Source: Dimorphilus gyrociliatus (Eukaryota > Animalia > Annelida). Taken from it: 64,000 bases of DNA. The notes beneath the pieces are model-generated. The model worked only from the letters and a program-made list of their open reading frames with translations, was not told the origin of the DNA and made no database searches. Position 1 is the stretch's first letter. Each line of letters starts with the position of its first letter. This document shows, in pieces, positions 1,009 to 52,632 of this stretch. The translations under genes and the position numbers were made by a program. The stretch is taken from assembly GCA_904063045.1 (NCBI GenBank), contig CAJFCJ010000028.1, positions 811,230-875,229 on the forward strand, written 5' to 3'.

Positions 1009-2890
1009 ATAACTAGACTCTTTAATTACCTTTCATTAATAAATTTGGAAAGCATACTGCAATAAACAACTGGTAAGATAAGTTTTTGATCAATGCTTTC
1101 ATTAGAACGTTATTCTTAATTATTACGTCATATCCTTCTACTCATCCTTTGAATTAGTATGAACAGCCATCATCGCTAATTAGTGCAATTTTCATCTAAG
1201 AGTCTTAGATAAAAGTTTCTTTTGTTTAAACTTCACACCTCTTATTGTTATCTTGATTGTTTAAGGCCTATTTTATCTTCGTTCATCTAAAGTCTCATAT
1301 CAATTAAAATTACCCATTGATGGATTTTATATAGCGTCTGACCTAATAAAAATTTTCTCTTTAAATTGGTTCATATAAGCTAATTGTTAAAGAAAATTTC
1401 TCTTTTTGGTGAATTCAATAAAAAACGAGGTTCAATGATAAAAAGTTTTTTTGCAAAATAATTTATTAACAAGCTCGAATATGTGAAATATTAAAAAATG
1501 AAGGGAATTCTTATTCAATAATTTGTTGTAAAAGTTCTCTTTTCCCTTTTCATTTTAAACATAAATAAAATAGAAAATGATGCCTAAAATCTTTTAAATA
1601 AACTTTTGACAGTTCATATAAATAAATAGAAATAGTACAATTATTTGAAAGGTTAAGATAACCCAGTTTTCTTTTAATAGTTTATTGTTATTGTTTTAAC
1701 TGTCGATGTTCTTTCATATGTCAAAATAGTCCCTTATTCCAATTTATAGTCCGTTTTTCTCTTGAAATTTTGGGTCACAGGCCAATAAAACGTAAATTGT
1801 CATTTCGTAACCCCAAAAGAACTTCAAGAGCTACTTTATTGTAAAACTTAAAAGGAATAATAGGACTATTGCAAGAAAAAAAAATACTTTCCAATTAAAT
1901 TAACTATATTACGATTTTCAAATAGACTCGACTAGACGACGGTAATTTTAGTGATTAGATGGCGGTAAAGATTGCAGATTACGTAATATGGGTAAATTCC
2001 TTGTGAATTTCTTTGAATGGCTTCTACATAAGTAACTAAATGACCTGAATTGAACTTGTTTGCATATGAAACGCTTGAGAGGTAAATTGTCTGAAAGGAA
2101 GAAATAGAGTATAACTATAGTTTTTTAACAATAGGTAGAAATTGCTCCCGCTTTTTTCCATTCAATTCTTTATCTCACAATCTAGAGTCCCACAGCGTTA
2201 TCGCCTTATCGTCGAGTGCTGTTAACAAGGTAGACCCTTAAGGCTTTAAAGCTTATTTCTGCTCTGAATAATTAAGGCGTTAAGGAAAAGCTCGAATCTT
2301 TTAGATAATAAAAGAAAATTTTCCCCTTAACCGAGCTCAGTGAGAACTTGGTCTGACACGATAAATCTTAAGAAAATGATATGTTTGACGAAGACTTTCA
2401 TTTATCCCTACATAACTTACAATTTACATTGTTAAAATACCGTTGTTGTGATCGATGTCTCACTTTTAAAACTAGGGCGTGCGAGGGGGGAGAATGAAAA
2501 AAAGAAAGAAGAATAGCATTGTTACAATACAATCATAATCAATTTATTGGCACTTAAAGATTGAAACATTATACATCATACGATAACCATACTGTATTTT
2601 ACAATAAGTGATTGATATTAGTTCGAGTTGTTACTAGTGAATTAATATCATAAAAAGCGTATTTCTTTAAGACTTGTTAACTCAACAATAAATTATAATA
2701 TCCTTAGAAAATTTATCAAATAAATTATATATCATTAAAAAGAGGAGAAAACTATAATTAGCTTAGTCTACTTCTTTGTTAAGTAATAAGTGTCAAAATT
2801 TTTATTCAAATAATAAAAGAACATAAATTCTTTTTATATTATTTTCTCAGTTTCAATACAACGAATTCTTTTCTTTTACATAATATACAG

Positions 2891-2914
2891 TATATATATA
2901 TATATATATATATA
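2891..2914. repeat. (TA)n microsatellite
   Basis: Perfect TA run directly visible, preceded by TACAG. Confidence 0.95.
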
Positions 2915-3313
2915 AATATAGTCATAAGAAATATGCTTTTTATTATTATAAAGAACAAGGAAAAAGAAAATTTAACACTAGTTATTAAGTAACAAAGTAA
3001 TTATTATTATTTGGCTTGTTTTTATTGATGTTTAGAAAAAATTCATTTCCTATTTATTGATCTATTTTCATTGAAATTTGCATAATATCTGCAATGTAGG
3101 CATTATTCTAATTAATTAGCGATGTGTAAACTTTCATTACAAATCAGGCTTCGTCACCGCTTTGTTTACATTGTTGCTAAGACAGCCGAGCCTATAGATG
3201 AATAGTGACACTTGTATTGATATATGGCAGACATGCGCAGGGCTCAGACGCCATTTTTAAAATCACTTGTCATTCGGGTTTCTTTTCATAACAATAGAAC
3301 GCGCAAAAAATAA

Positions 3314-8777: not shown

Positions 8778-11700
8778 ATGGATCATATTGAACGTCAATA
8801 CGTAACAAGTGAATCGAGCGATGAGGATGACGACGACGTAGAGAGTAGGGTATTTAAAACAGTTGACGAGTTTATTAGGTAAGTCTCTTTTAATATCTCA
8901 TATATATATATAGTATAGATACCTTTTAACGAAAAATCAAATATAAATGTTTATCATAGTATTTTAAAAGAACAAATAATAAACAAACTAACATCACAAA
9001 ATATGATGTCCAACAGATGGCGGTGTATTAAACAAGCTTATTTTTTTCATTTTAAAGAATCAATTGGTCAACGAAAAGAAATAGAGCGTACAATTTGATT
9101 TATAATTAATGTACAGTATTTAAATTAAACAAAGTGTTTTTTTACAAATAGTCTATTACTGAAATTACTGATTTTATTACATAGAATTCAATTATTCACA
9201 TTATGTATATACAGTATGTTATATAATATTACAATATACAGTATTTACCTTTTTTTAATTGGCAGCATTGATGTATTTGAAAATTATATATATATATATA
9301 TATGATTAAATCAATGCATGGCGACCTATCTAACGGTATTTGAGAACGCTGTAACATATGAAATCTTTGTATAGGGATTAATTGCAAATTGTACTTTTTA
9401 ATGCTTTCTAATAACTCAAATTAGAATAATTTTAGTTTACTTTTTTCAAGGCTATAGTTGGATAATCAGAATTTAGATTTTTTTACTAGAGACTAGCAGC
9501 ATATACGCTTATATACATTTTATATTTAGTGCTAATATATTAAGCTTATAGTTATATGGCTCAAGTATAGTAGGTAATTTAATAAATCTTCAACGTCTCT
9601 TAGTAACGAAAGGAAGAGGTAGGAAACTCTTTTGGACTTTATCTTAGTACATCTGTTTTATTAGAGCAATTAAGCAAAGTTATAATTTATAAGTAAAAGA
9701 AATATTGTCAATCAATACATCTATTGTTTTTAGAAATAGACTAGCCTTGAAAAAGAAGGAAATTATATTATAGTCAGTTCCTGAAGGATTAAACTTATTT
9801 TATACATCGTGAGAATAGAAATATCCATTTTTCATTGTTTCAATAAATATATTAAGATTTTATTTATATATAATTTGTCTTGTTTATGTAAAAATTATAA
9901 AACAACTATGTTATTTCCAACAGATATACAATCCGCCGAAAAACTATTAACTCGGATCTTGCTAGGAAAGCTGCTGAATCTGTTCATGAATTAGTTAATA
10001 TAGATCTTGACACTGATAGTCGAACAAGATTGGTTAGTTAAGATCAATTCTTTTATCAAATATAAAATAATTATTATCTAGTTTTTTTTATGTTTTTAAC
10101 GAATTTAAAGACTTTTTTATTGATTAAAAAAAAATTCTCTATATTTTTTAATATAATTATTAAATTAGAAAAAAGAGAGAAAAAATCATTTTTTATTGAC
10201 AATCTCTCTTCCAATTTAAATATATATTTTTAAAAAAATACTTGTATACTTCACTATTCATTTCTTAACTATCCCATTGGTTTTACAGTCTATAGTTGAT
10301 TTTTTCCCTTGTTAATCTCTCTTCCCATATCAGATGGTATTTAAAATGTATGCGCTAATTTATATATATTAGACATTAGGAAGATATGTTTTTCTTATCC
10401 AGTTCGAACTATTTTCTTATATCTTTTCATTAAATGTATAAATATTTCATTAAGCGCTGAAGAGCTATATGAATAACTAATTGCATAAAAGCAACTGTAA
10501 GCTGTATAAGCTGTTAATAAGATGTATTTTATTCTAGAAGAAATTTTTGCAGATTTTATAAGAAATAAGCAAACTTTTAACTATAATAATCCAACATCAG
10601 TTACAGTTGTTTGGAGACAGTTAGGAAAATTAGAACTATTTTAAGAGAACAATCGTGCAAGAATAAGTACATAAGAGTGAAAGCCATACCTGATCGTCGC
10701 AGAATACACATTTACAACACAATTTTCACTCCTAATGAAAATAACTATAGCTCAGATGATTTGTCAGACGTATGGCAGAATCTTAAATCGGAAAAAAATA
10801 GTTTTCTTTTAGGGGCACTCTGAAGAGAGACAGTAGAGAAGAGTTGTCTGCGGAAGAGAGAAACAGAGAAATATAGTTTGAGAAATAAAGAAACATTGAT
10901 CCTAATCCTATATTAAGAGTATTGTGAAAATTTCTTTTTTTTTTTGTTAAAATGCTAATTAAAGAAAAACAAGGATACATTACAAAAAAATAAGAATTTA
11001 TTGTTTACTCTTTCAATGAAATATGATGGTAGTATATGATATGCTCTCCTTAATTTTATATATAAGACTATAAGCATCACAAAAGTGTTTAATGACTACA
11101 TTACTGTTCATGCTGAATATTAAAAACGTTGTATTATTTAATTATGATTTCTATTTAATAGAACAAACAAAATATTATACACAAGAGTTTACAGTATCTA
11201 TAATTTCTTTTCTCTATTGTACAAGTAGTCCTACATTTAAGATAATATATAAAGCACAATAAGTCCATTTTAAAGGCACCAACCATCTCATTTTTATTTC
11301 AAGTAAACCATTTAGATATCTTATTTTCTATTAATAGTAATAATAAAAATATATTATATCTTTTTTCAAGGTATATTACCCCAGTTTAGAAGATTTAGGG
11401 GTAAGATTATTAGCATAGATTCCTATTTTCAATAAGAAATAAATGAGCTGCTTAGCTGCTTAGCTAAAAAAGAAAATGGAGCCTAGTGTAGTTTCTATGT
11501 GTCAAATAATTAAAAGTTATTGATATGTATTCTATGGCTAAACCATTTCGCTTGGTTTTTTATACACAATTTCACGTAGGTATTGCTTCTTCTCGTATTA
11601 TTAGGATATACTACGCAATTTTAATTATAAATATACTATATACTTCCTCAGCACTCAACGAAAATCATCAAAGTTGAAGAAATATTATAATAATTAGAGA

Positions 11701-14682
11701 AAAAAAATGAGATTTCATTAAATCTAAAACCCGCTACATACTTCTTCGAAATTCTTGATTAAACAGAGCTTAATTAAAGGATAAAAAATCGTTGCATAAG
11801 ATTTATTGAATTTCCTGTATAGGAAGTGCCTTTCCTGATATAATATACAAAAAGAAAGATTGCAAATTGATGTGAAATGTATCCGCTAATAACTGTATAA
11901 AATGTTGTAGTATTAAAGTTATTTATATAATGCTACCTGTTCAGAATAGTTAATTTTATTCTATATACAGAGACTAATAACTCAAATTGTTATTGCGTAG
12001 TATGAAAAAAAAATCACTTTTTTATTTAAACATTATGGGAAAATGTTTCGTTTAGCTTTTACTTTCTTTCATAGGTTTTATGGTTAAGATCTGAATTAGA
12101 AGAAGAACGTAGACAAGCGTCTTTACAGATTGAAAATGCTTACAAATACGTTGAAAACGAACGTTTAAAAGTTCGAGAAATTTTTGATATTTTATACGAC
12201 ATTGAAAGTTTGTTTGGCGGAGATGAGACACAAGATGCTCTCACGACAGCAAGAAATATTTATGATAAAATTAAAAACATGGAATACGTGACTACTGGAG
12301 TTGGTAGACGTCACGAAGAAGATCTAAAACTACTAAAAGATGAGTGTGAACAGCTTAAAAATAAACTATTAGAGGAAAGGAAAATTAATAGTAGTCAAAC
12401 AGGGAAGTTAATGTATGCTTTAGGTGTGGCAGAAAGAGCCGCAACGAAGAGAAGGAGACGGTTACTGAGAAATGCCAGTGTTCAAACGGATATTCAAAAA
12501 CACAGGAATAAGGGTATTCAATTTTCTGGAATGAGTTGTATATCAAAGGCTGTTCAGACAGTTGGTTCATTCGGAGGTATACAGCAAAAGAAACTAGCTC
12601 TTTTAAATTTAGGAGTAGGCGATGAAGCAACTCCAACAAGACGGAGCACAGGGTTGCCTCAATTAAAAAAAGGCGTGAGTTTCAGTCTTCATGATGATAA
12701 TTATCAACTACGAAAGAATATTCATATGGGTGAAGTTTTACGAGAAACAAAGAATATGTATTGCTTATCTGATGAATTTTTACAAAAGAGATCATTACTC
12801 TTAAAAGATAGTATGAAATTAAAGAAAACGTCTTTAGCTGAATTAAAGAACAGTTCCTCAAATCATTGGAAATTATCATCTACAAACTTATCATTAAGCG
12901 AAGATATATCAGAAAATCGTAAATCATTTATACCACCCATTGAGGAGACGATAAGGAAAAGGTTTACATTATCAAGTGAGGATCAAAACGTAAAGAAAAG
13001 TAAGTTGATAGTCATAGCTTTTCATTTAACATTTATCTTATATAAGTATGCATTAATGGTATATTTAAATGTAAAGAAGCCATATTGTGTATATCATACA
13101 TATAGTATACATATTACTTAAATTGTGTCTAATATACATTGGTTATTTATTGCGAAAACTCATATCTCTAAGTGTTATAGAGGAAATTTGGACTGAGAAT
13201 TTTTACCTAAAAACTATTTATGTTACATAGATTATCATACAGCTGACTGCGTACTGTTCTGTAATGGTATAAAATATTGATAATCTGTCTGAACAGAGGT
13301 TAAAAGAAAAAAAATATGACATTTAAGAAAAGTACTCATTTATTCCACATCAGACGACAAATTACTAAAGAACTAACAATTATTTTGCTGTCAAATGAAA
13401 CAATCCAATATATTTTCTCAGAAAATTATTACTGACCTAAAATGTTATTAAATATATTATAGATGATTTCATATCTTTTATCTTTACAGAATAAAAGATA
13501 TAGTTGGAGAGGGAAAGAAATAGAGAGAAAGAGAGAATTAGCGGATAAAATCTAGCAAAGAGAATAGGTGTAAAAAATAATTCATCCCTTTCTATTTCTG
13601 TTTCTCTTCTTCCCTACTCACATCCTTCAGCTATTTCCTAGAAATTCTCTTTTTAACTAGATTATAAAGGACGAATCAAAAAGCAATAGCACATATGGCT
13701 CATTCTTCAAAAATTAGCCTACTTTATTGCAGAATATTTAATAAACTTCGGTAGTTAACGCTTGAATCTTGAAAAGTTTACAGATATTTTAAACTATTTT
13801 GTACAGTGAGAAAGTCAAGGGCATCATATATTTATGGTTATGACGTTTTATTATGACTAATGCATCAGAGTTGTTTCTTTCTTGATATAGCATTGACAGT
13901 AAACGTAAATTTCATAAATGAAAACTATCCATCTGATAAAAGAAAATTTCTTCCTAATTTAAACTAATACTGCTTGGATATTATTGATCGCTAGCGTTCC
14001 TAATAAGTATTAAATTCTTTTAAGCTATCTCTCTTTTCTATATTCTTTTTTTAAATTGATAGATGTCGCTTTATACAAACTAATGAAAACAAACTTTGAA
14101 AAAAAATTTCTTACTTGACTTTACCAGGCTGATTCGTAGGTTTTATCGATTTAGTCATTAAGTCTAATGTCTGTCGCCTTTCAAGACTAAAGGAAAAAAT
14201 ATGGGGTAAAGGCGTGCAATGATAATGACTAAAAATTAAAAATAGTCTTCTTTTTCATTAGTTTTTTCTATAAAAGAAAAAGATACTTTGTACCCTATAT
14301 TTGTATAATTATTACTTCCTTTCATTGTACCAGTATTTAAATAATATTCTGTGATTTTGTTTTCAAATAACCTATTTACAATTACGTTTTTATTGCTCTT
14401 TTCTTAGAGGAAAACAATGAAAAGAGTCGCCAAAAGAAGATTATGTTTTCCAATGGGATAAATACAAAGGATATAAAAAAGAGAACTACGAATGAAATAT
14501 GTTTACGATGTGAACGCCCCCTGACGGCTCCACCACCCTGCCGCTTTCATCCGCGTTCTAGATGCAAGCTTGAGCAATACGACGTAGCGCGAGGTAAAAT
14601 ACTAAAGGTCGTTCAAGTTTGGGAATGCTGCCTCCGCGAATCGACGGCCTCTGGTTGCTGCACGGCCGTCGACCACGTTTAA
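8778..14682 (+). CDS. Uncharacterised coiled-coil protein with C-terminal Cys/His zinc-binding motif (4 exons, 469 aa)
   Basis: Exons 8778-8878, 9924-10032, 12075-12999, 14408-14682; all GT-AG, phases 2/0/1 match, total 1410 nt. Acidic N-terminus (SDEDDDDVES), coiled-coil (LRSELEEERRQ; LKLLKDECEQLKNKLLEERK), C-terminal CLRC-x9-CRFHP...WECC-x7-GC...HV. Confidence 0.8.
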
Positions 14683-14688
14683 CTGTTT

Positions 14689-17600
14689 ATGGAAAAGAAG
14701 CGTCTATTTGGTATTATCCTTGTGACGCCGTTGATGGCAGTCACTTGGGCTTGCGCAACTAGACTTGCTAAGAGTATTTGCTTCGAAAACGATGAGACTT
14801 TTAAGTCGCCTTCCATGCTTGTATTCATAACGTCGGCTTGCCTATTTCCAGTGTTTCCAATTTACCTTATTATTGCTAGAAAAGGATTATCAACCGTTAG
14901 GGATTATATGAAGGATGAGAAACCTCTAAGAATGCTAATGAAATTTTTTATGTTTTGTTTTTTGTCATGGATTTCGAATTATTCTTATATTAGTAAGTTC
15001 TAAATCCTATTTCACCTAAAACTTATTAAGACAAATAGTATAGACTTAAATAAAGAACAATACGTAACAACTTGTAAGATAATTATGTAATTAATCATTG
15101 AATATTGAAGTAATATTTAATAGAATAAAGAAGTTGTCTTTTATCAATTAAAGCACTTTTTATTCAGAATTTCCATATTCTTTTCCCTTGGTTATTTATT
15201 TATTTATAATCAAATATATATTCTTTAATCTTTACTTTTTTGACAATTCCAGGACCTTTTTTCTGTTTTTATTTATTTCAAGTCTTTCTAATATGTTTAC
15301 TGTATATATTTTATATTTTCTAGACTTTTATTATAGCAATACTTCTATCGTTATGTAAGCTAAAATAAGTTATGAATATTACTATTCAACTATTCTTTGT
15401 TAAGCTTTATAATCATTTCTAAGTATCCATTAACTTAGTCCTTTTTAATCATTTATTGGTTGTAGGTAAATAAGAGTTTATCCTGCTAATTGGATGTTAT
15501 CTTTAAGATTGTTTTGTTAAATGAGTAAGAAATGGAGACAAATGCAGTGTTAGTCTGCTAGCAGTCTTAAAAGAGTTTTTATATTATTCTCGTACGGGCA
15601 TAAAGAAAAAAAACTAATTCATATTATTCCGCCTACTTTTTTCCCCTCCACCCACCTCTTATCTGCGAAATAAAAAAAAAAGAAACAAAAGGAAAGAGGA
15701 TTGATCTCTATTGATATTTCCAATAATATTTCAATAGTTAATACTTGAAGAACAGTTCGTTATTGAATTAATAGGAAAAGTAAAAAAGGCATCATTTTCA
15801 ATGTCGTTTAAGAATTTTTTTTAAACAACTCATATATTATTTGGATTTTAATTTGTAACCTAATTACTTAATCCTCTACCAGGAGCATTGAGCATGCGCA
15901 CATCAACCGAGGTTACAACATTATTTGCTGTTAATCCAGCTTTGGTCTCCTTATCTTCTTGGATCATCCTACATGAAAAGTTTGTTGTTACAAAGGTTAG
16001 TTAATGGCTTAACATTATTTCTTTACAATTACGTAAAGTAAACGAAAACAAGACGGAATAAAAGCAGATTAAGACAAATTGACTATTAGTCGCGATAATC
16101 GTTATCATCTTTATTTTTCGGTTAATGAACTAAAAAGTTTGTAAATGATTGGTGACTATTTGCCAAACGCTCCTCACAAAGACGATCGTTTGTCAATGAA
16201 TAATAATCCAGATCGATAGTGTACTCTTGGCTTTTATTTTACTTTATTATTTTATTAGGCCTATTTATTACCTTAGGTTGTATTTTATGATGAATAAACG
16301 ATTTCTTAATAAAAGAATTAAAAATATTTTATGGGTAGATATCAAAAGAAGACTACTGTTTTAAAAAGACTGTATTTTAAAAAATTTACGTAATTGAAGA
16401 GATTACTAAAATAAAGTAGGTTAACCGTAAGAGAAAGCCAGACAGAGAGTGAGAGAGAGAGAGAAAACTATGACTTCTCGCAGACAGTATCCACTTGACT
16501 AATAAAGATTTTATAAACAGAGTAGAAGAGTTTATTGGCATATTCTAAATTTAAAAGATGATTGATATTGTTGACGTTCATACTTTAGGTTTTCAAAAAT
16601 TTTTAATAGAAAACATTCTGATGAATGATTTCCAATTTAGGATCAATTTACATCTCGGTTTCGATTGAATAAGAAACAAATAATAAACATTACATTAATT
16701 AAAGATTGCCTATCCTATAAAATTAATAATTAAGGCCAAGTATTGTATTTTTTTATAGCTTTTCCCCTGATTTCAACCAAAGGAACTGATAAAAAATAAC
16801 TTCGATTCTTAGTTTCCTGTTCCCTTTGAAGTATATACATCTTATTTATATACATAGTAAAACTAATGTCAATTTTCTTCTCTAGTAAACCATTAACTTA
16901 TTTGAAGAAATAAGAAAATTTCTTTATTATTGTAAATCGATCATCTTGCTTATTCGTCTACAATTCAAATAGGCTTAACTTATTTGTTTTTATTTAGCTG
17001 TAATATGTTAATTTTTTGTGTTTTTTTTTTCTGATTTAGTTTTATAAGTGAGGTTCGTGGAATTATTCACTCTACTGATGATTTCCCCTAGATACGACTA
17101 ATTTGATAGAAAGTCATTCATTAGAACCAATCCGACCCATCAGAATATTTTCTCCATGCTATTCACAGTAAAGTGATGCTAGAAATGACTCAGTAGTTGT
17201 AAGATATATTCATAAAATATGATAATGCCTAAATCATGATATATTGATACTTCCAATCTAAATTACAACTATTAGTCATCCGCTTTTTTTTTACTCAGTG
17301 TTTACAACCTAATTTAGCCGATTGTCTACTTTTGATGTTTAAAATTAGAATTTTTTGTTTTAATCCTCGAATAATATATTTTTTTATAGAAAGTAAGTTT
17401 ATTTTAGTAGTATAAGTTTAAATTAGAACATGTAGACTTTATCGTACATTTATGAATCACATATGTTTAAATGCATGAAATTTTCTGATTTTTCTTCATT
17501 AATTATAAAAGAATAGCTTGAAATCTTGTATTTCTTATTCATTATCATATTTCAGTAATTTTTCTTTTTATAGAAATATTATTCTTTTTTTGCACAAGTC

Positions 17601-19578
17601 AGCTAAATTAGTATTTTGAATAATTACTGATCTTTTTAAAGGGTAACACCCTTTTCTAAGATTATTCTTGATAGGCGAAGTAAATATGTGGAAGCAGTCG
17701 ATTAATTAAGGCCTTATAACAACCAATTCAATCATGTGGATTAATAGATTGGCTTCAATATAGTTATTATATCAGATGTCAATCATTTACGAATTTAATT
17801 AATTCATTAACATAATTACTTTCAAAATTTATATTTAGTTATTGAATGACCGGAAATTGTTTAAATATTTCAAGAAAAATTCGTATAGAGAGTAAGCAGA
17901 ATGAGTATAGTTAATGTTTTAAACACTACAAGTACAAAAGGCCTACAAATATTAAAGAAGAAAAAAAACAATCGAAAACGCTTGTTCGTAATCTATAAGT
18001 AATAAATACTGTAGCTTAATCTTCTTGAACAGCTATTAAAAACAGAAACAACATCTTTGATTGGTTTAACAAAACTTGATTAAGACAAAGCTACAAGAAA
18101 CACTGACTAGTGAAAACGCCTGTTTTTCGTTTTTAATGTATAACAACAACAAAAACAGAGAGAAAGCTTATAAAAATACAAAAATTCTTTACACGAAATT
18201 ACACTATCCTCAGTATAAATTAATAAATATTTTCCTATTAGCTCTATAAGTAGTAACATCAAACCTTTACTTATTATAACACGTACTGTTTCAACCAGAG
18301 AGATAGAGCAAATCAATCTAATTTGACAGTAGCCCTTTTTTCTGCACTCGTATCGTATTTTAATTATTAAAAGTTTATACAATCAATGTATAAAGTACAT
18401 ATCTCACTCTTAAAAATAACTTCATGAATTTGTTTTTGCGTTTGAAGGGGAAACAACTACAATGAGCACAAACACAAAATGAGTTAGAGAGAGACATTGA
18501 ACTTGGGAGAAACTTGTTTAGTATATAATATACTTGAATAATACCTATGTTATCCCATATTGTATTCAGTTAGAAACATTGAAAGTAACGATAACTTACC
18601 ATTCGTAAATCGCTTATTCATAACTTGAGCAAATTTAGATCAATAACATCCGTAATGGGAATTGGTAAGACATTTATTCGTCAGTATTTCAAATTTAATG
18701 TTTGACGCTTCATTATTCTGCCGACTGTTAAATAGAGCATTAACTTAATTTTGAAATTATGTTAAATATGCATTTGCAAAATGTGAAAGTTGATATTTTC
18801 CATTTTCTATCTAAATAAGAATGAAGAGAAATTAACTATTTTGAATAGAAAATAAAACCTAATATACAAATAATTCAAAAATAATAACTGATTTTAATAC
18901 TGTTAATGTTCACGATCATCAATACTTAATATCTATAAACTAAATGGATTTACTATTCATACTTTCCATCATTTCCAGGTTATAGCTGTAATAATCTCGA
19001 TGACAGGAGTTGCAATGTTGGCCTATATGCATAAGTCACCTTCTAAAATGTGGGCGGCTTTGTTAGTCGTTTTTAGTGCTGCTATTTCATCAACCTATAA
19101 AGTTTTATATGTTAGATTTTCATCTCCTAATTCGAAGTCTGTTGGGTCTGTGGCGTTCTTCCTCAGTGGCGTTGGTTTATGCAGTTTACTATCAAGTTGG
19201 CCTATACCTTTGACTCTAGCTTTAACCGGGGTCGAACCACTCAATAATCCTCCTTACGGTTTAGTGGCAGGGACTATTGCGTTGGCTGTTGCCGCTACGC
19301 TATTTGCCAATATAGGATCAACTTTAACTTACAACGTTGCTGTCCAAGCAGGTTTAATTCTGTCGATAGGCGTTGCGATAATCCTTGACGCCTATTATGA
19401 ACAGTTGGATTACAGGCCAATGCAAATTGGAGCTATGGTGCTGATTGCTTGCAGTTTTATTTTCGACGCATGCATTAATATACTATTTGAATATTGTAAT
19501 AAAGTTTATTGTAAAGATAGAATTAAGAAAAAGCAAGAAAAGACAGAATCCAGAAATGGACTTTCATATAACAGATAA
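14689..19578 (+). CDS. SLC35F3/4: SLC35F3/F4-like drug/metabolite-superfamily transporter (3 exons, 338 aa)
   Basis: Exons 14689-14992, 15883-15995, 18979-19578; phases 1/0 match. Motifs TWACATRLAK, SNYSYIRAL, TTLFAVNPALVSLSSWIILHEKF, SAAISSTYKVLY and multiple TM helices align with the SLC35F3/F4 pattern from memory. Confidence 0.88.
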
Positions 19579-21075
19579 CATTTTTTCGTATATCTTGAAC
19601 TCTTCTCTCGTAGATTAACAATTGGAAAATTTTACATTTTTATCAAACTCTTTTTTAGGTTTTCTGCAATTTTTTCTACTTTTATTAGTATTCAAATTTT
19701 ATTCAATTTATATATAAAATATACAGAAATTCAACGAAAGAGCGAAAGAGACAAATAGGGAATGAAAGAATAGAGCCTCATTTTCTGTTTCCTTTTATTT
19801 TTGCACGTACACGTACGCCATCTACTTTTCTATTTTCAAGTGAATTACATAAACATTTTGAAAACTATCAAAACGACGATTTTATCAATAATATATAAGT
19901 AATAACAAATACATTCAGATATTACACTCTCCTCTATTCATTTATGTAATAAAAGTGTTAATATAAGCAAGTTATACACTTTTTTTTAATGTAAAATCTG
20001 CATAGTTTCGTCAAACTTGAATATATTGTTTCTGTTCAATAAATACAACTTTTTAAATATACTCTTTCATCACTGAAGACAATAAAGACTATATTCATTA
20101 GTTCTTTCTATATAAAATTAACTAACTCAAAAATATAGATACGAATAGAAAATGCTAAAAAAAGAGATTTTATTGCAGTTTACTCCATCTGGTGTTTGAA
20201 AGAAAGATTTTATAAGAAGAGAAAATAACGTCGACTGATTGAAAGAACGAATGCAATTTTTTTGTGTTGGTTGTAGATTTATTAATAAAATGTTTATTCA
20301 ATATAATCAGTCTGCAAACTGTGCTTTCAAAAGTCTGTTGAAGTCAATTTGCTCACCAACTATATTATAGAATTCCTATTAAAAAAGCCGAATATTCTGT
20401 TTGATTACCTTTACTTAATTATAAAGAACGAAGTAATTATCATATGCTCGGTATAGATATTATAAATATAAATATAAAGTATATATTCAATTAGTATTTC
20501 ATTGCATAATATTTCTTTTCATTCAATAGACTGACTGATAATACTGTACAAATGATAGTATTATCTTTACCTCTCTTCTATAATATGTAATAATCAATTA
20601 AAGTGATACCATTTTGTTTTTATTTCCATTATAGTTTAATTTTGCGGGACTATCTTAATCATCTCTTTGTAATGTTATTATAGTAACTTTTTTATTACAA
20701 TTTCAGTTGTAGCCATTCAATTTTCAAGGCAAAAAGTCAATGCTTTATATTTTAAAAGTCAATAATACAACACATTTACGTTTACAAAAGATGTATATGC
20801 ACTAGGCTCTCAATGTATATTCTGAACTGTTTTACTACTTATATTTGACCTTAGTGAACGTTCTAAATAAAGAAAAATATAAATTAACAGTGGATTTCAT
20901 GTTGCTTCTTTCCCATATACCAATTTCCATCTTTTTTCGTCATTTGATTATTTCTATTTTCCTTTCTAAAATATGTTTCTTTATGCAAAACCACGATTTT
21001 TTATAATTAATCAATATTAATACATTTAAAATCAACTGTTATGTAATGCTTCTCTTTTTGGTTACTCTCGTGTTT

Positions 21076-52000: not shown

Positions 52001-52632
52001 AATGTCAAAAGTGAAGGGTAGGATAAAAATTGACCTGGCACATGGCAATTGAAAGGTAAAAGTAAAGATAGTCAGAAATTGAGTGTGCAAACGTTACAAT
52101 TGAATAAAAATTGGTATTGTCTTTTAGATGAAATGGAGATATTAAGTTAAGGTTAAGCTTTTGATAGCAAAAAGTTACTAAAATACACATTATCATTAGA
52201 TTTCGTATCAAAGGAAGAGTAAAAGAAGCGGAGAATTACAAATGACAAACACCCAGTACTATAGACTAAGGAGTATAACAAGAAATGAGTCACGCCCGAC
52301 CGAGCAGATCGCGCATCAACTACTTGTGACAGAGTGACGTGATCTGCTGTGGCAAGCCGTCACAAGGCGTCACTCGCAGGCACGTCCAGTCGCACGCAAC
52401 ACGGCCCTAAGGGCAAGCGACCCTTTTTAGCGACCTGTTTGTCGCGCCTTGGCACAATCGAAGAGATTACAAAACGGGTACAAAAGCTTGTCGGAACCAA
52501 TCTGACAAACATGTGCCGTTGACAGGTACGGCGACGACGTTGCGCACAGTCTATAATTATAGAAGGGCGTTCTTTTTCCCTGCGGGAGCGACAGCTAATA
52601 TAGTCTTTTGCGCCCCGTTCGTGTTGTACATT

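What the first reader, a model, noticed from the sequence alone, without database searches (positions are those of the whole stretch)
14408..15054. Two unrelated genes separated by 6 nt in the same frame: candidate bicistronic mRNA, stop-codon readthrough or overlapping transcription units
Seen: ...GAC CAC GTT TAA CTG TTT ATG GAA AAG... The coiled-coil/zinc protein stops at 14680-14682 and the SLC35F ATG is at 14689, in the same frame, leaving no room for a polyadenylation signal or promoter. The spliced upstream frame (12999 to 14408) and the SLC35F ATG (just before TM1) are both well supported. The nearest AATAAA (15049-15054) lies inside SLC35F intron 1. Inference, alternatives: (a) a bicistronic mRNA with re-initiation; (b) UAA-C readthrough giving an approximately 810-aa zinc/coiled-coil-transporter fusion; (c) overlapping units in which intronic polyadenylation yields the upstream mRNA and SLC35F uses a promoter in intron 12999-14408, turning the zinc-motif exon into a uORF. 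Any of these is unusual for an animal locus.
Basis: partly seen in the sequence, partly recalled or inferred. Interest (0 to 1): 0.8.

Follow-up and report, generated by a model that had tools for sequence, protein, structure and literature searches.

The report
Two worm genes six bases apart
In the miniature annelid Dimorphilus gyrociliatus, reported to have no operons, a zinc-motif protein gene stops 6 bases before the start codon of a membrane-transporter gene; the junction is conserved in a related worm and both genes lie on one spliced RNA contig, so this is probably a rare two-protein (dicistronic) gene unit.

Summary
TAA 14680-82, spacer CTGTTT and ATG 14689 lie in one frame. The window is Dimorphilus gyrociliatus (GCA_904063045.1).

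- **Upstream gene:** DgyrCDS13971, 479 aa, 5 exons. It ends at the C-terminus conserved in all 17 distant relatives found (a CHORD-like Cys/His motif).
- **Downstream gene:** a complete 3-exon, 338-aa, about 10-TM EamA/SLC35-like transporter. The reference annotation holds only its last exon (192 aa).
- **RNA:** one contig joins 12091-12999, 14408-14992 and 15883-15999 with GT..AG joints and no mismatch.
- **Conservation:** a related worm (Logan SRR23372228/29/31) keeps TAA, a 6-nt spacer (one C>T) and the ATG.
- **Signals:** neither species has AATAAA or ATTAAA between the stop and the next splice donor. ORF1 is not depleted of AUG.
- **Constraint:** the junction lies in a GC-rich island with reduced synonymous change.
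- **Other annelids:** four other loci show no transporter downstream, so the adjacency is derived.

Best reading (about 0.4): a dicistronic mRNA without a spliced leader, with the transporter translated by termination-coupled reinitiation. Close rival (about 0.33): a second transcription start inside the shared exon. Readthrough fusion, SL trans-splicing and an intronic promoter are disfavoured. Single-molecule and TSS data are missing.

The scan's first readers noted more than 10 similar tight pairs elsewhere in this genome. Those notes are unchecked.

The parts
8778..8878 (+). Upstream gene DgyrCDS13971, exon 1 (ATG at 8778, context AAAATGG)
   Evidence: the exon sum reproduces the 479-aa P0001; GT donor at 8879.
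9924..10032 (+). Upstream gene exon 2
   Evidence: AG/GT flanks; the translation matches P0001.
11371..11400 (+). Upstream gene exon 3 (30 nt)
   Evidence: AG/GT flanks; encodes VYYPSLEDLG of P0001.
12075..12999 (+). Upstream gene exon 4 (308 codons, coiled-coil-like, two RVxF-like motifs KGIQF and KGVSF)
   Evidence: 100% match to P0001. RNA contig covers 12091-12999 and is joined to 14408. 75% nt and 73% aa identity to the relative's L001.
14408..14682 (+). Upstream gene exon 5: CHORD-like C-terminal Cys/His motif plus stop codon
   Evidence: 8 invariant ligands (C21, C24, C34, H37, C63, C64, C73, H79 of A1), and every relative ends at ...H-[VIM]. Weak CHORD hits.
14680..14682 (+). TAA stop of the upstream ORF
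   Evidence: no mismatch in RNA; TAA conserved in L007.
14683..14688 (+). 6-nt intercistronic spacer CTGTTT (TTGTTT in the relative)
   Evidence: same length, one C>T at 14683. It holds no AG, so no trans-splice acceptor.
14689..14992 (+). Transporter exon 1 (ATG at 14689, context TGTTTATGG with U at -3; TM1 starts at residue 6)
   Evidence: 88% aa identity to P0025 of the relative. GTAAGT donor at 14993.
15883..15995 (+). Transporter exon 2
   Evidence: joint 14992|15883. EamA, E=0.0016. 91% nt identity to L007 2616-2728.
18979..19578 (+). Transporter exon 3 (last; TAA at 19576-78). Only 19000-19578 is annotated in the reference, as a 192-aa protein (P0026).
   Evidence: the loose end after 15999 is found at 18983-19006.. 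Atlas structure matches to EamA/SLC35F3-like clusters, TM 0.71-0.72.
14460..14840 (.). GC-rich island straddling the junction (GC 0.48-0.56; GC3 about 0.5 against 0.25-0.33 in other exons) with reduced synonymous divergence
   Evidence: one of the two GC-richest 200-nt patches in 64 kb; synonymous change 16% in the first 50 transporter codons against 43% in exon 4 (Fisher p=0.0006); 14662-14762 is 97% identical.
14620..14626 (+). UGGGAAU, which contains the UGGGA core of TURBS motif 1, 56-60 nt upstream of the stop
   Evidence: One search gives the position; PMC3035654 gives the motif and its usual place. It is encoded by the family-wide W-E of WECC, so it may be a by-product. A lead only.
14625..14762 (+). 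Alternative-frame ORF (45 aa) spanning the junction. It would be an inhibitory overlapping uORF for any transcript starting upstream of 14625.
   Evidence: kept open in both taxa, but 8 of 45 residues differ. No sign of protein-level selection.
14115..14252 (.). Conserved non-coding block in intron 4 (86% identity over 139 nt)
   Evidence: A possible cis-regulatory element; function not tested.
13808..13864 (.). Second conserved block in intron 4 (78% over 63 nt; holds TGACGT and TGACTAA)
15049..15054 (+).
   Evidence: Present, but no RNA contig covers 15000-15399 and it lies in sequence that does not align with the relative. About 0.5 chance expectation in 100 nt of such AT-rich DNA.
19948..19953 (+). 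First AATAAA after the transporter stop: candidate shared poly(A) signal (others at 20038 and 20081)
   Evidence: Use not tested.

Best explanation
This is a genuine dicistronic gene without a spliced leader. Transcription starts at the upstream gene's promoter (before 8778). The upstream gene has no terminator of its own, so polymerase runs through the transporter gene to a poly(A) site near 19950-20100. All six introns are removed, giving an mRNA of about 3 kb that carries ORF1 (479 codons), 6 nt, and ORF2 (338 codons). Scanning ribosomes translate ORF1. A fraction of the 40S subunits that terminate at UAA stay on the mRNA and restart at the first AUG, 6 nt downstream, which gives a low, fixed ratio of transporter to ORF1 protein. 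The GC-rich island around the junction, constrained at synonymous sites, would be the cis element that favours this restart.

Shown: the anatomy, the co-linearity of both ORFs on spliced RNA-derived sequence, the absence of AATAAA/ATTAAA between them, conservation of the junction, and purifying selection on both ORFs.

Inferred: that single molecules carry both ORFs, that there is no second start site, and that ORF2 is translated by reinitiation.
For: - **RNA:** one 1611-nt RNA-derived contig covers 12091-12999 | 14408-14992 | 15883-15999 with GT..AG joints, 0 mismatches and no branch at 14408 or 14992. There is no coverage of the flanking introns next to the shared exon.
- **No terminator:** neither taxon has AATAAA or ATTAAA between the stop and donor 14992.
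- **Conserved junction:** stop, 6-nt spacer and ATG are kept in a relative whose four-fold sites are about 50% diverged. Positions 14662-14762 are 97% identical.
- **Spacing:** the AUG is the first after the stop and lies within the 20-nt or smaller stop-start distance of known termination-reinitiation systems (PMC10275272).
- **Start context:** the -3 U is conserved and is poor for scanning. TURBS-type restart does not depend on Kozak context.
- **Both ORFs functional:** most substitutions are synonymous.
- **Natural C-terminus:** ORF1 ends where all relatives end.
- **Annotation:** the reference pipeline, which was given transcripts and CAGE, produced no separate full transporter model.
- **Local spacing:** the 6-nt gap is not local compaction, since neighbouring gaps are 2.5-3.8 kb.
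Against: - A de Bruijn contig across two genes does not prove a single molecule. Overlapping transcripts would assemble in the same way (tool caveat).
- Only one small run of unknown library type was available.
- Reinitiation after a 479-codon ORF is normally inefficient.
- No unusually stable RNA structure sits at the junction (z = -0.7 and -0.07).
- The UGGGA motif is explained by W-E codons.
- The strongest synonymous constraint lies downstream of the AUG, not upstream as in TURBS.
- The exon 2-3 junction contig has depth 72.7 against a mean of 27.8 for the two-gene contig. That could mean extra transporter-only transcripts, or simply 3' bias.
- The genome paper reports canonical promoters and no operons.
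Confidence: 0.4

Rival explanations
1. Overlapping (nested) transcription units. The read-through two-gene RNA exists, but the transporter is translated from a shorter, capped mRNA whose start site lies inside the shared exon. It would have to lie between 14628 and 14688, after the last upstream AUG. The GC-rich island would then be a core promoter embedded in coding sequence.
For: - The GC-rich island with synonymous constraint straddles the junction. The genome paper reports GC enrichment downstream of start sites.
- The only other comparably GC-rich patch in the window (52280-52620) is non-coding and looks like a promoter.
- Conserved non-coding blocks lie 440-880 nt upstream, in an intron 20 times the genome's median length. 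The paper links long introns with open chromatin.
- Depth is higher at the exon 2-3 junction than the contig mean.
- Cap-dependent translation needs no special mechanism.
Against: - No recognisable conserved TATA box or initiator: the TATA-like strings at 14473 and 14596 are not conserved.
- The start site would be confined to a 61-nt window by the overlapping uORF at 14625.
- The poor -3 U is conserved.
- This reading does not explain why the spacer is as short as 6 nt.
- The promoter would have to coexist with a protein motif conserved across annelids.
- The reference annotation, refined with CAGE, has no such gene start.
Confidence: 0.33
2. The transporter uses a promoter in intron 12999-14408, which turns the zinc exon into a 79-aa uORF. 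The upstream mRNA ends by intronic polyadenylation at AATAAA 15049.
For: Conserved blocks sit in the intron. AATAAA lies 57 nt into intron 1, and the relative has ATTAAA at +8 and AATAAA at +94.
Against: - RNA contigs show depth 0 at 13000-14399 and 15000-15399, and the main contig is unbranched at both exon edges. Short tips can be clipped by the assembler, so this is not proof.
- The hexamers lie in sequence that does not align between the taxa, and are expected by chance about half the time in such AT-rich DNA.
- The GTAAGT donor at 14993 is a perfect consensus.
Confidence: 0.06
3. Programmed UAA readthrough that gives a zinc-motif-transporter fusion of about 820 aa.
For: The same frame and a 6-nt spacer are kept in both taxa. 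The one spacer change (CTG>TTG) is synonymous in that frame. The window has C at +4.
Against: - UAA, the least leaky stop, is conserved, and +4 is U in the relative.
- All 17 relatives end exactly at ...H-[VIM], and none of the four other loci examined carries a transporter downstream of this gene.
- Being in frame has a 1 in 3 chance.
- One substitution carries no statistical weight.
Confidence: 0.04
4. An operon of the nematode or tunicate type, resolved by spliced-leader trans-splicing.
For: The very short intercistronic distance resembles Ciona and Oikopleura operons (own knowledge).
Against: - The spacer holds no AG. The nearest AGs (14606, 14616) lie inside the coding exon.
- The RNA contig is unbranched through the junction.
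- The genome paper found no over-represented 5' leader.
Confidence: 0.04

Closest known systems
Dicistronic genes of animals without a spliced leader (for example Drosophila stoned and Adh-Adhr, mammalian SNURF-SNRPN and RPP14-HTD2; named from own knowledge, not tested here)
   Same: Two complete, unrelated ORFs on one strand share one set of transcription and 3'-end signals and have a short intercistronic gap. No trans-splicing is involved.
   Different: Here ORF1 is long (479 codons, 30 AUGs), the gap is only 6 nt and in frame, both cistrons share one exon, and ORF2 is itself interrupted by two further introns. A single-molecule RNA has not yet been shown.
Viral and retrotransposon termination-reinitiation (calicivirus and influenza B TURBS; SART1 UAAUG). 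Sources: PMC10275272, PMC3035654
   Same: Restart follows a long ORF. Stop and start lie within 20 nt. A UGGGA string lies 56-60 nt upstream of the stop, inside the 45-87-nt TURBS zone. Sequence around the junction is constrained.
   Different: The codons do not overlap. No motif 2/2* stem was found. The UGGGA is accounted for by conserved W-E codons. The strongest constraint is downstream of the AUG. This is a cellular, spliced mRNA. Nothing functional was tested.
Polycistronic nuclear genes of green algae (PMC7896298, PMC11291117)
   Same: Nuclear loci whose transcripts carry several ORFs with short inter-ORF gaps, found when full-length RNA was examined.
   Different: There the downstream ORF is reached by leaky scanning (abstract of PMC11291117). 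Here ORF1 has the expected number of AUGs (30 seen, 30.1 expected), which excludes leaky scanning.
SL trans-spliced operons (nematodes, tunicates, flatworms)
   Same: Tight same-strand gene pairs that are co-transcribed.
   Different: No acceptor in the spacer, no leader reported for the species, and an unbranched RNA contig.

Membership tests
Non-SL dicistronic mRNA | Two complete, non-overlapping ORFs on one strand with no poly(A) signal or room for a promoter between them | tested here: met
   6-nt gap, and no AATAAA/ATTAAA between the stop and donor 14992 in either taxon. ORF2 has 10 predicted TM segments (9 clear, 1 weaker) and starts 5 residues before TM1.
Non-SL dicistronic mRNA | A single mature RNA molecule carries both ORFs | tested here: inconclusive
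   one spliced contig spans both, but contigs cannot prove one molecule. No raw reads or long reads were available.
Non-SL dicistronic mRNA | No separate monocistronic mRNA for the downstream ORF | not testable with these tools
   Needs CAGE or long-read cDNA (PRJEB37657 holds CAGE data).
TURBS-type termination-reinitiation | Stop and restart codon within about 20 nt | tested here: met
   6 nt. Criterion from PMC10275272.
TURBS-type termination-reinitiation | Motif 1 (UGGGA core, complementary to 18S helix 26) towards the 5' edge of a 45-87-nt upstream element | tested here: inconclusive
   UGGGAAU at 14620-26 is in the right place, but it is encoded by the family-wide WE(CC). About 0.08 chance expectation. 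The worm's 18S sequence was not examined.
TURBS-type termination-reinitiation | Motif 2/2* pairing or another defined RNA structure | tested here: not met
   Fold z-scores are -0.71 and -0.07. The 8-bp stem 14640-14672 is broken by two changes in the relative with no compensation.
Programmed stop-codon readthrough | Leaky stop context conserved, and the extension under coding constraint as part of the upstream protein | tested here: not met
   UAA in both taxa; +4 is C in one and U in the other. All relatives end at this residue.
SL trans-spliced operon | Trans-splice acceptor before the downstream cistron, and a spliced leader in the species | tested here: not met
   No AG in the spacer, unbranched contig, and no leader found by the genome authors.
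SLC35F (Pfam PF06027) | Significant match to the SLC35F profile | tested here: not met
   Exon-by-exon Pfam scans give only EamA at E=0.0016 for exon 2. The joined protein was not scanned because it has no reference.
Drug/metabolite transporter (EamA/SLC35-like) fold | 10 TM segments in 5+5 arrangement with structural similarity to EamA/SLC35 proteins | tested here: met
   9 clear hydrophobic segments plus 1 weaker. The Atlas model of the last exon matches EamA and SLC35F3-like clusters at TM 0.71-0.72 by query.
CHORD domain (PF04968) | Match to the CHORD profile above threshold | tested here: inconclusive
   10 of 19 family members hit CHORD only weakly (best E=0.078). The profile against PDB gives RAR1 CHORD2 at E=0.11 and CHORDC1 at E=0.36. 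The AF2 model has pLDDT 62 and was not searched.

The most novel reading that the evidence does not exclude
A cellular, spliced animal mRNA uses dedicated termination-coupled reinitiation after a 479-codon ORF to make a second, unrelated membrane protein. The conserved GC-rich junction element, including the pre-existing WECC-encoded UGGGAAU, has been co-opted as a ribosome-retention signal. This locus would be one of a class of tight stop-start gene pairs in D. gyrociliatus, and that class would overturn the published statement that the species has no operon-like units.
Probability: 0.15. Interest if true: 0.85.

Novelty: new member of a known kind. Interest (0 to 1): 0.6.

Why it matters
D. 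gyrociliatus is the textbook case of conservative genome compaction. Its genome paper explicitly excludes operons and trans-splicing. A conserved two-gene unit with a 6-nt spacer, in a region that is not locally compact, shows that co-transcribed gene pairs can arise there without a spliced leader.

It also raises the question of how the second protein is made. Either answer is informative:
- A natural cellular case of reinitiation after a long ORF. The 2023 review says the rules for this are unknown for eukaryotic mRNAs.
- A promoter embedded in a deeply conserved protein-coding motif.

There is a practical result too. The reference annotation misses two thirds of the transporter gene, most likely because the pipeline allows one CDS per transcript. 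Similar pairs flagged elsewhere in this genome may hide further unannotated genes.

Tried and rejected
- **Leaky scanning:** rejected. ORF1 has 30 ATGs against 30.1 +/- 5 expected.
- **Stable RNA structure or IRES-like fold at the junction:** no support, z = -0.7 and -0.07. A local 8-bp stem is not maintained in the relative.
- **Dual coding by the alternative-frame ORF 14625-14762:** the ORF is open in both taxa, but 8 of 45 residues differ and every nucleotide change alters it. It is a by-product.
- **CTCF-like and TATA-like strings in the island:** seen by eye, not conserved in the relative, dropped.
- **Rfam:** no family in the window.
- **Pfam, PDB sequence and word-index protein searches for the upstream protein:** nothing beyond its own relative. 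The exhaustive HMMER search then found 17 distant relatives.
- **AF2 of the zinc motif:** pLDDT 62, too poor for a fold search.
- **Synteny in other annelids:** no transporter within 10 kb downstream in Capitella, Paralvinella, an ENA assembly or GCA_029979845.1. Two further ENA loci gave no DNA. One of them has an unidentified 365-aa ORF 2.4 kb downstream.
- **Metagenome scan for a third taxon:** nothing.
- **Paper supplements:** no CAGE table is held.
- **Further RNA contigs by exact protein look-up:** none on record.
- the joined 338-aa transporter and the read-through product were not searched or folded, because they have no reference. Exons were searched one by one.

Full report
**Observation.** The sequence reads ...GAC CAC GTT TAA CTG TTT ATG GAA AAG... 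TAA is at 14680-14682 and ATG at 14689-14691, in one frame.

**Organism and upstream gene.**
- The 308-codon exon 12075-12998 is 100% identical to DgyrCDS13971 of the annelid Dimorphilus gyrociliatus (P0001, 479 aa).
- The window corresponds to CAJFCJ010000028.1 of GCA_904063045.1.
- Five exons (8778-8878, 9924-10032, 11371-11400, 12075-12999, 14408-14682) reproduce the 479 residues exactly. All have AG/GT flanks.
- The deposited annotation ends this gene at the same TAA.

**Downstream gene.**
- An RNA contig's loose end placed the third exon at 18979. The gene is therefore 14689-14992, 15883-15995 and 18979-19578, which is 338 codons.
- Hydropathy gives nine clear hydrophobic segments and one weaker one. 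The first begins at residue 6, so ATG 14689 is the natural start of a complete 10-TM protein.
- Exon by exon, Pfam gives only a weak EamA hit (E=0.0016, exon 2).
- The ESM Atlas model of the last exon matches EamA and SLC35F3-like clusters at TM 0.71-0.72.
- I therefore call it an EamA/SLC35-like transporter. Membership of subfamily F is not shown.
- The reference annotation holds only the last exon, as a 192-aa protein (P0026). The gene is largely unannotated.

**RNA evidence.**
- Only one public run was offered (X1; 2017, 60 Mb, kept as Logan contigs, library not on record).
- It must be RNA-derived, because its contigs are spliced.
- One 1611-nt contig lies on 12091-12999, 14408-14992 and 15883-15999, with two GT..AG joints and no mismatch.
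- The TAA, the spacer and the ATG are therefore present in RNA, on sequence spliced on the left to the upstream gene and on the right to transporter exon 2.
- No contig covers intron 13000-14399 or 15000-15399.
- At 15999 the path splits into a spliced continuation to exon 3 (depth 72.7) and a weak intron-retaining one (depth 4.1).
- Caveats apply. A contig is not a molecule, short tips may be clipped by the assembler, and depth is a single figure per contig.
- The higher depth at the exon 2-3 junction and the contig's fade-out at 12091 fit two readings equally: 3' bias on one long RNA, or extra transporter-only transcripts.

**Conservation.**
- Genomic Logan contigs from three runs of a related taxon (SRR23372228/29/31) carry the orthologous exons. 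The identities are 73% aa in exon 4 and 88% aa in transporter exon 1.
- In L007 the junction reads GAC CAC GTT TAA TTG TTT ATG. It has the same stop, the same 6-nt spacer with one C>T, and the same start.
- The 585-nt shared exon aligns without gaps at 85% identity. Positions 14662-14762 are 97% identical.
- L001 and L007 abut through a 24-nt A-rich overlap, and the intron blocks are collinear. The whole arrangement is therefore shared.
- Substitutions are mostly synonymous in both ORFs, so both genes are under purifying selection.

**The stop is the ancestral one.**
- An exhaustive HMMER search found 17 distant relatives of 413-563 aa. They include Capitella ELT95906.1 and Paralvinella KAK2165202.1, both uncharacterised.
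- All carry the Cys/His motif at the extreme C-terminus and end at ...H-[VIM].
- The motif has eight invariant ligands. It resembles CHORD only below threshold.
- None of the four loci with DNA (Capitella, Paralvinella, an ENA assembly, GCA_029979845.1) has a transporter within 10 kb downstream.
- The juxtaposition therefore arose in the dinophilid lineage.

**Signals.**
- Neither taxon has AATAAA or ATTAAA between the stop and donor 14992. The first such hexamers lie in non-alignable AT-rich intron sequence, where they are expected by chance.
- The spacer holds no AG. The genome paper found no spliced leader and concluded that operons and trans-splicing do not occur (PMC7854359).
- ORF1 has the expected number of AUGs (30 against 30.1), which excludes leaky scanning.
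- The transporter AUG has a conserved U at -3.

**A constrained GC-rich island.**
- Positions 14460-14840 form one of the two GC-richest patches in the 64 kb. GC is about 0.5 and GC3 about 0.5, against 0.25-0.33 in other exons.
- Among codons with a conserved amino acid, 43% changed synonymously in exon 4, 30% in the zinc motif (p=0.09) and 16% in the first 50 transporter codons (p=0.0006).
- Selection therefore acts on the nucleotide sequence itself.
- It is not an unusually stable RNA fold.
- It is not explained by the alternative-frame ORF 14625-14762.

**Mechanism.**
- Two readings survive. In both, the upstream gene's transcripts must run into the transporter gene, so the two-gene RNA is real.
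- I favour, at about 0.4, that this RNA is also the transporter's mRNA, with restart of post-termination 40S subunits at the AUG 6 nt on.
  - This explains why the spacer is so short and so conserved.
  - It explains why the Kozak context can be poor.
  - It explains why no separate gene model exists.
  - It matches the stop-start distance of 20 nt or less in known termination-reinitiation systems (PMC10275272, PMC3035654).
  - A UGGGAAU lies 56-60 nt before the stop, where TURBS motif 1 would sit. It is encoded by the family-wide WECC, so it is only a lead.
- The rival, at about 0.33, is a start site inside the shared exon between 14628 and 14688, with the island acting as an embedded promoter.
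  - It needs no unusual translation.
  - It fits the GC enrichment downstream of start sites that the genome paper reports, and the conserved blocks in the long intron.
- Lesser alternatives:
  - The literal intron-promoter plus intronic-poly(A) model (about 0.06).
  - Readthrough (about 0.04).
  - SL trans-splicing (about 0.04).
  - Each is contradicted by at least one result above.

**Context in the scan.** First-reader notes on other windows of this genome list more than ten further tight same-strand pairs. Examples are FABP-TRPV 9 nt apart, UQCC5-UQCC6 joined by TAA-A-ATG, and an IGHMBP2-SPIDR AUGA overlap. They are unchecked and are not evidence here. They do suggest that a genome-wide test is worthwhile.

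**Verdict.** This is a real, conserved, RNA-supported stop-6 nt-start junction between two unrelated functional genes, in an animal said to lack operons. It is a new member of the known, rare kind of dicistronic gene without a spliced leader. How the second protein is made remains open. Existing CAGE data and a long-read run would settle it.

Noticed in passing
window 14689-19578: The reference annotation of D. gyrociliatus holds only the last exon of this transporter, as a 192-aa protein starting at an internal Met (19000). Exons 1 and 2 are unannotated, probably because the transcript was given a single CDS.
   Followed up: yes
window 11752-11967 vs L001 625-842: A 218-nt non-coding block in intron 3 of the upstream gene is 83% identical between the two taxa, more than the adjacent coding exon (75%). 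It holds a TTCC-N6-GGAA palindrome. A low-depth RNA contig lies just beside it (11652-11805).
   Followed up: partly
window 15996-16326 vs L007 about 2729-3085: The alignment around transporter exon 2 runs about 330 nt on into intron 2 at 77% identity. This is another conserved intronic block.
   Followed up: no
P0001 and relatives P0003-P0019 (alignment A1): An uncharacterised animal protein family of 413-563 aa; the only two members with a taxon on record are annelids. It has a C-terminal 8-ligand Cys/His motif that is distantly CHORD-like with an inserted beta-hairpin. The two dinophilid proteins share RVxF-like strings (KGVSF; KGIQF/KGVQF), which might indicate PP1 binding. No Pfam family covers it.
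   Followed up: partly
L006, L010 and the loci of P0004/P0009, against window 8778-14682: In several relatives the family gene is a single uninterrupted ORF. In D. gyrociliatus it has four introns of 0.7-1.4 kb, in a genome whose median intron is 66 bp.
   Followed up: no
window 52280-52620: The other GC-rich outlier of the window is a non-coding patch of about 340 nt (GC up to 0.56) with TGACGT-type strings. It lies upstream of the minus-strand teashirt-like gene and is likely a promoter or 5' exon.
   Followed up: no
locus of P0004 (ENA ERZ26222911, no DNA served): A 365-aa same-strand ORF without any Pfam hit lies 2.4 kb downstream of the family member. It could not be compared with the transporter.
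   Followed up: no
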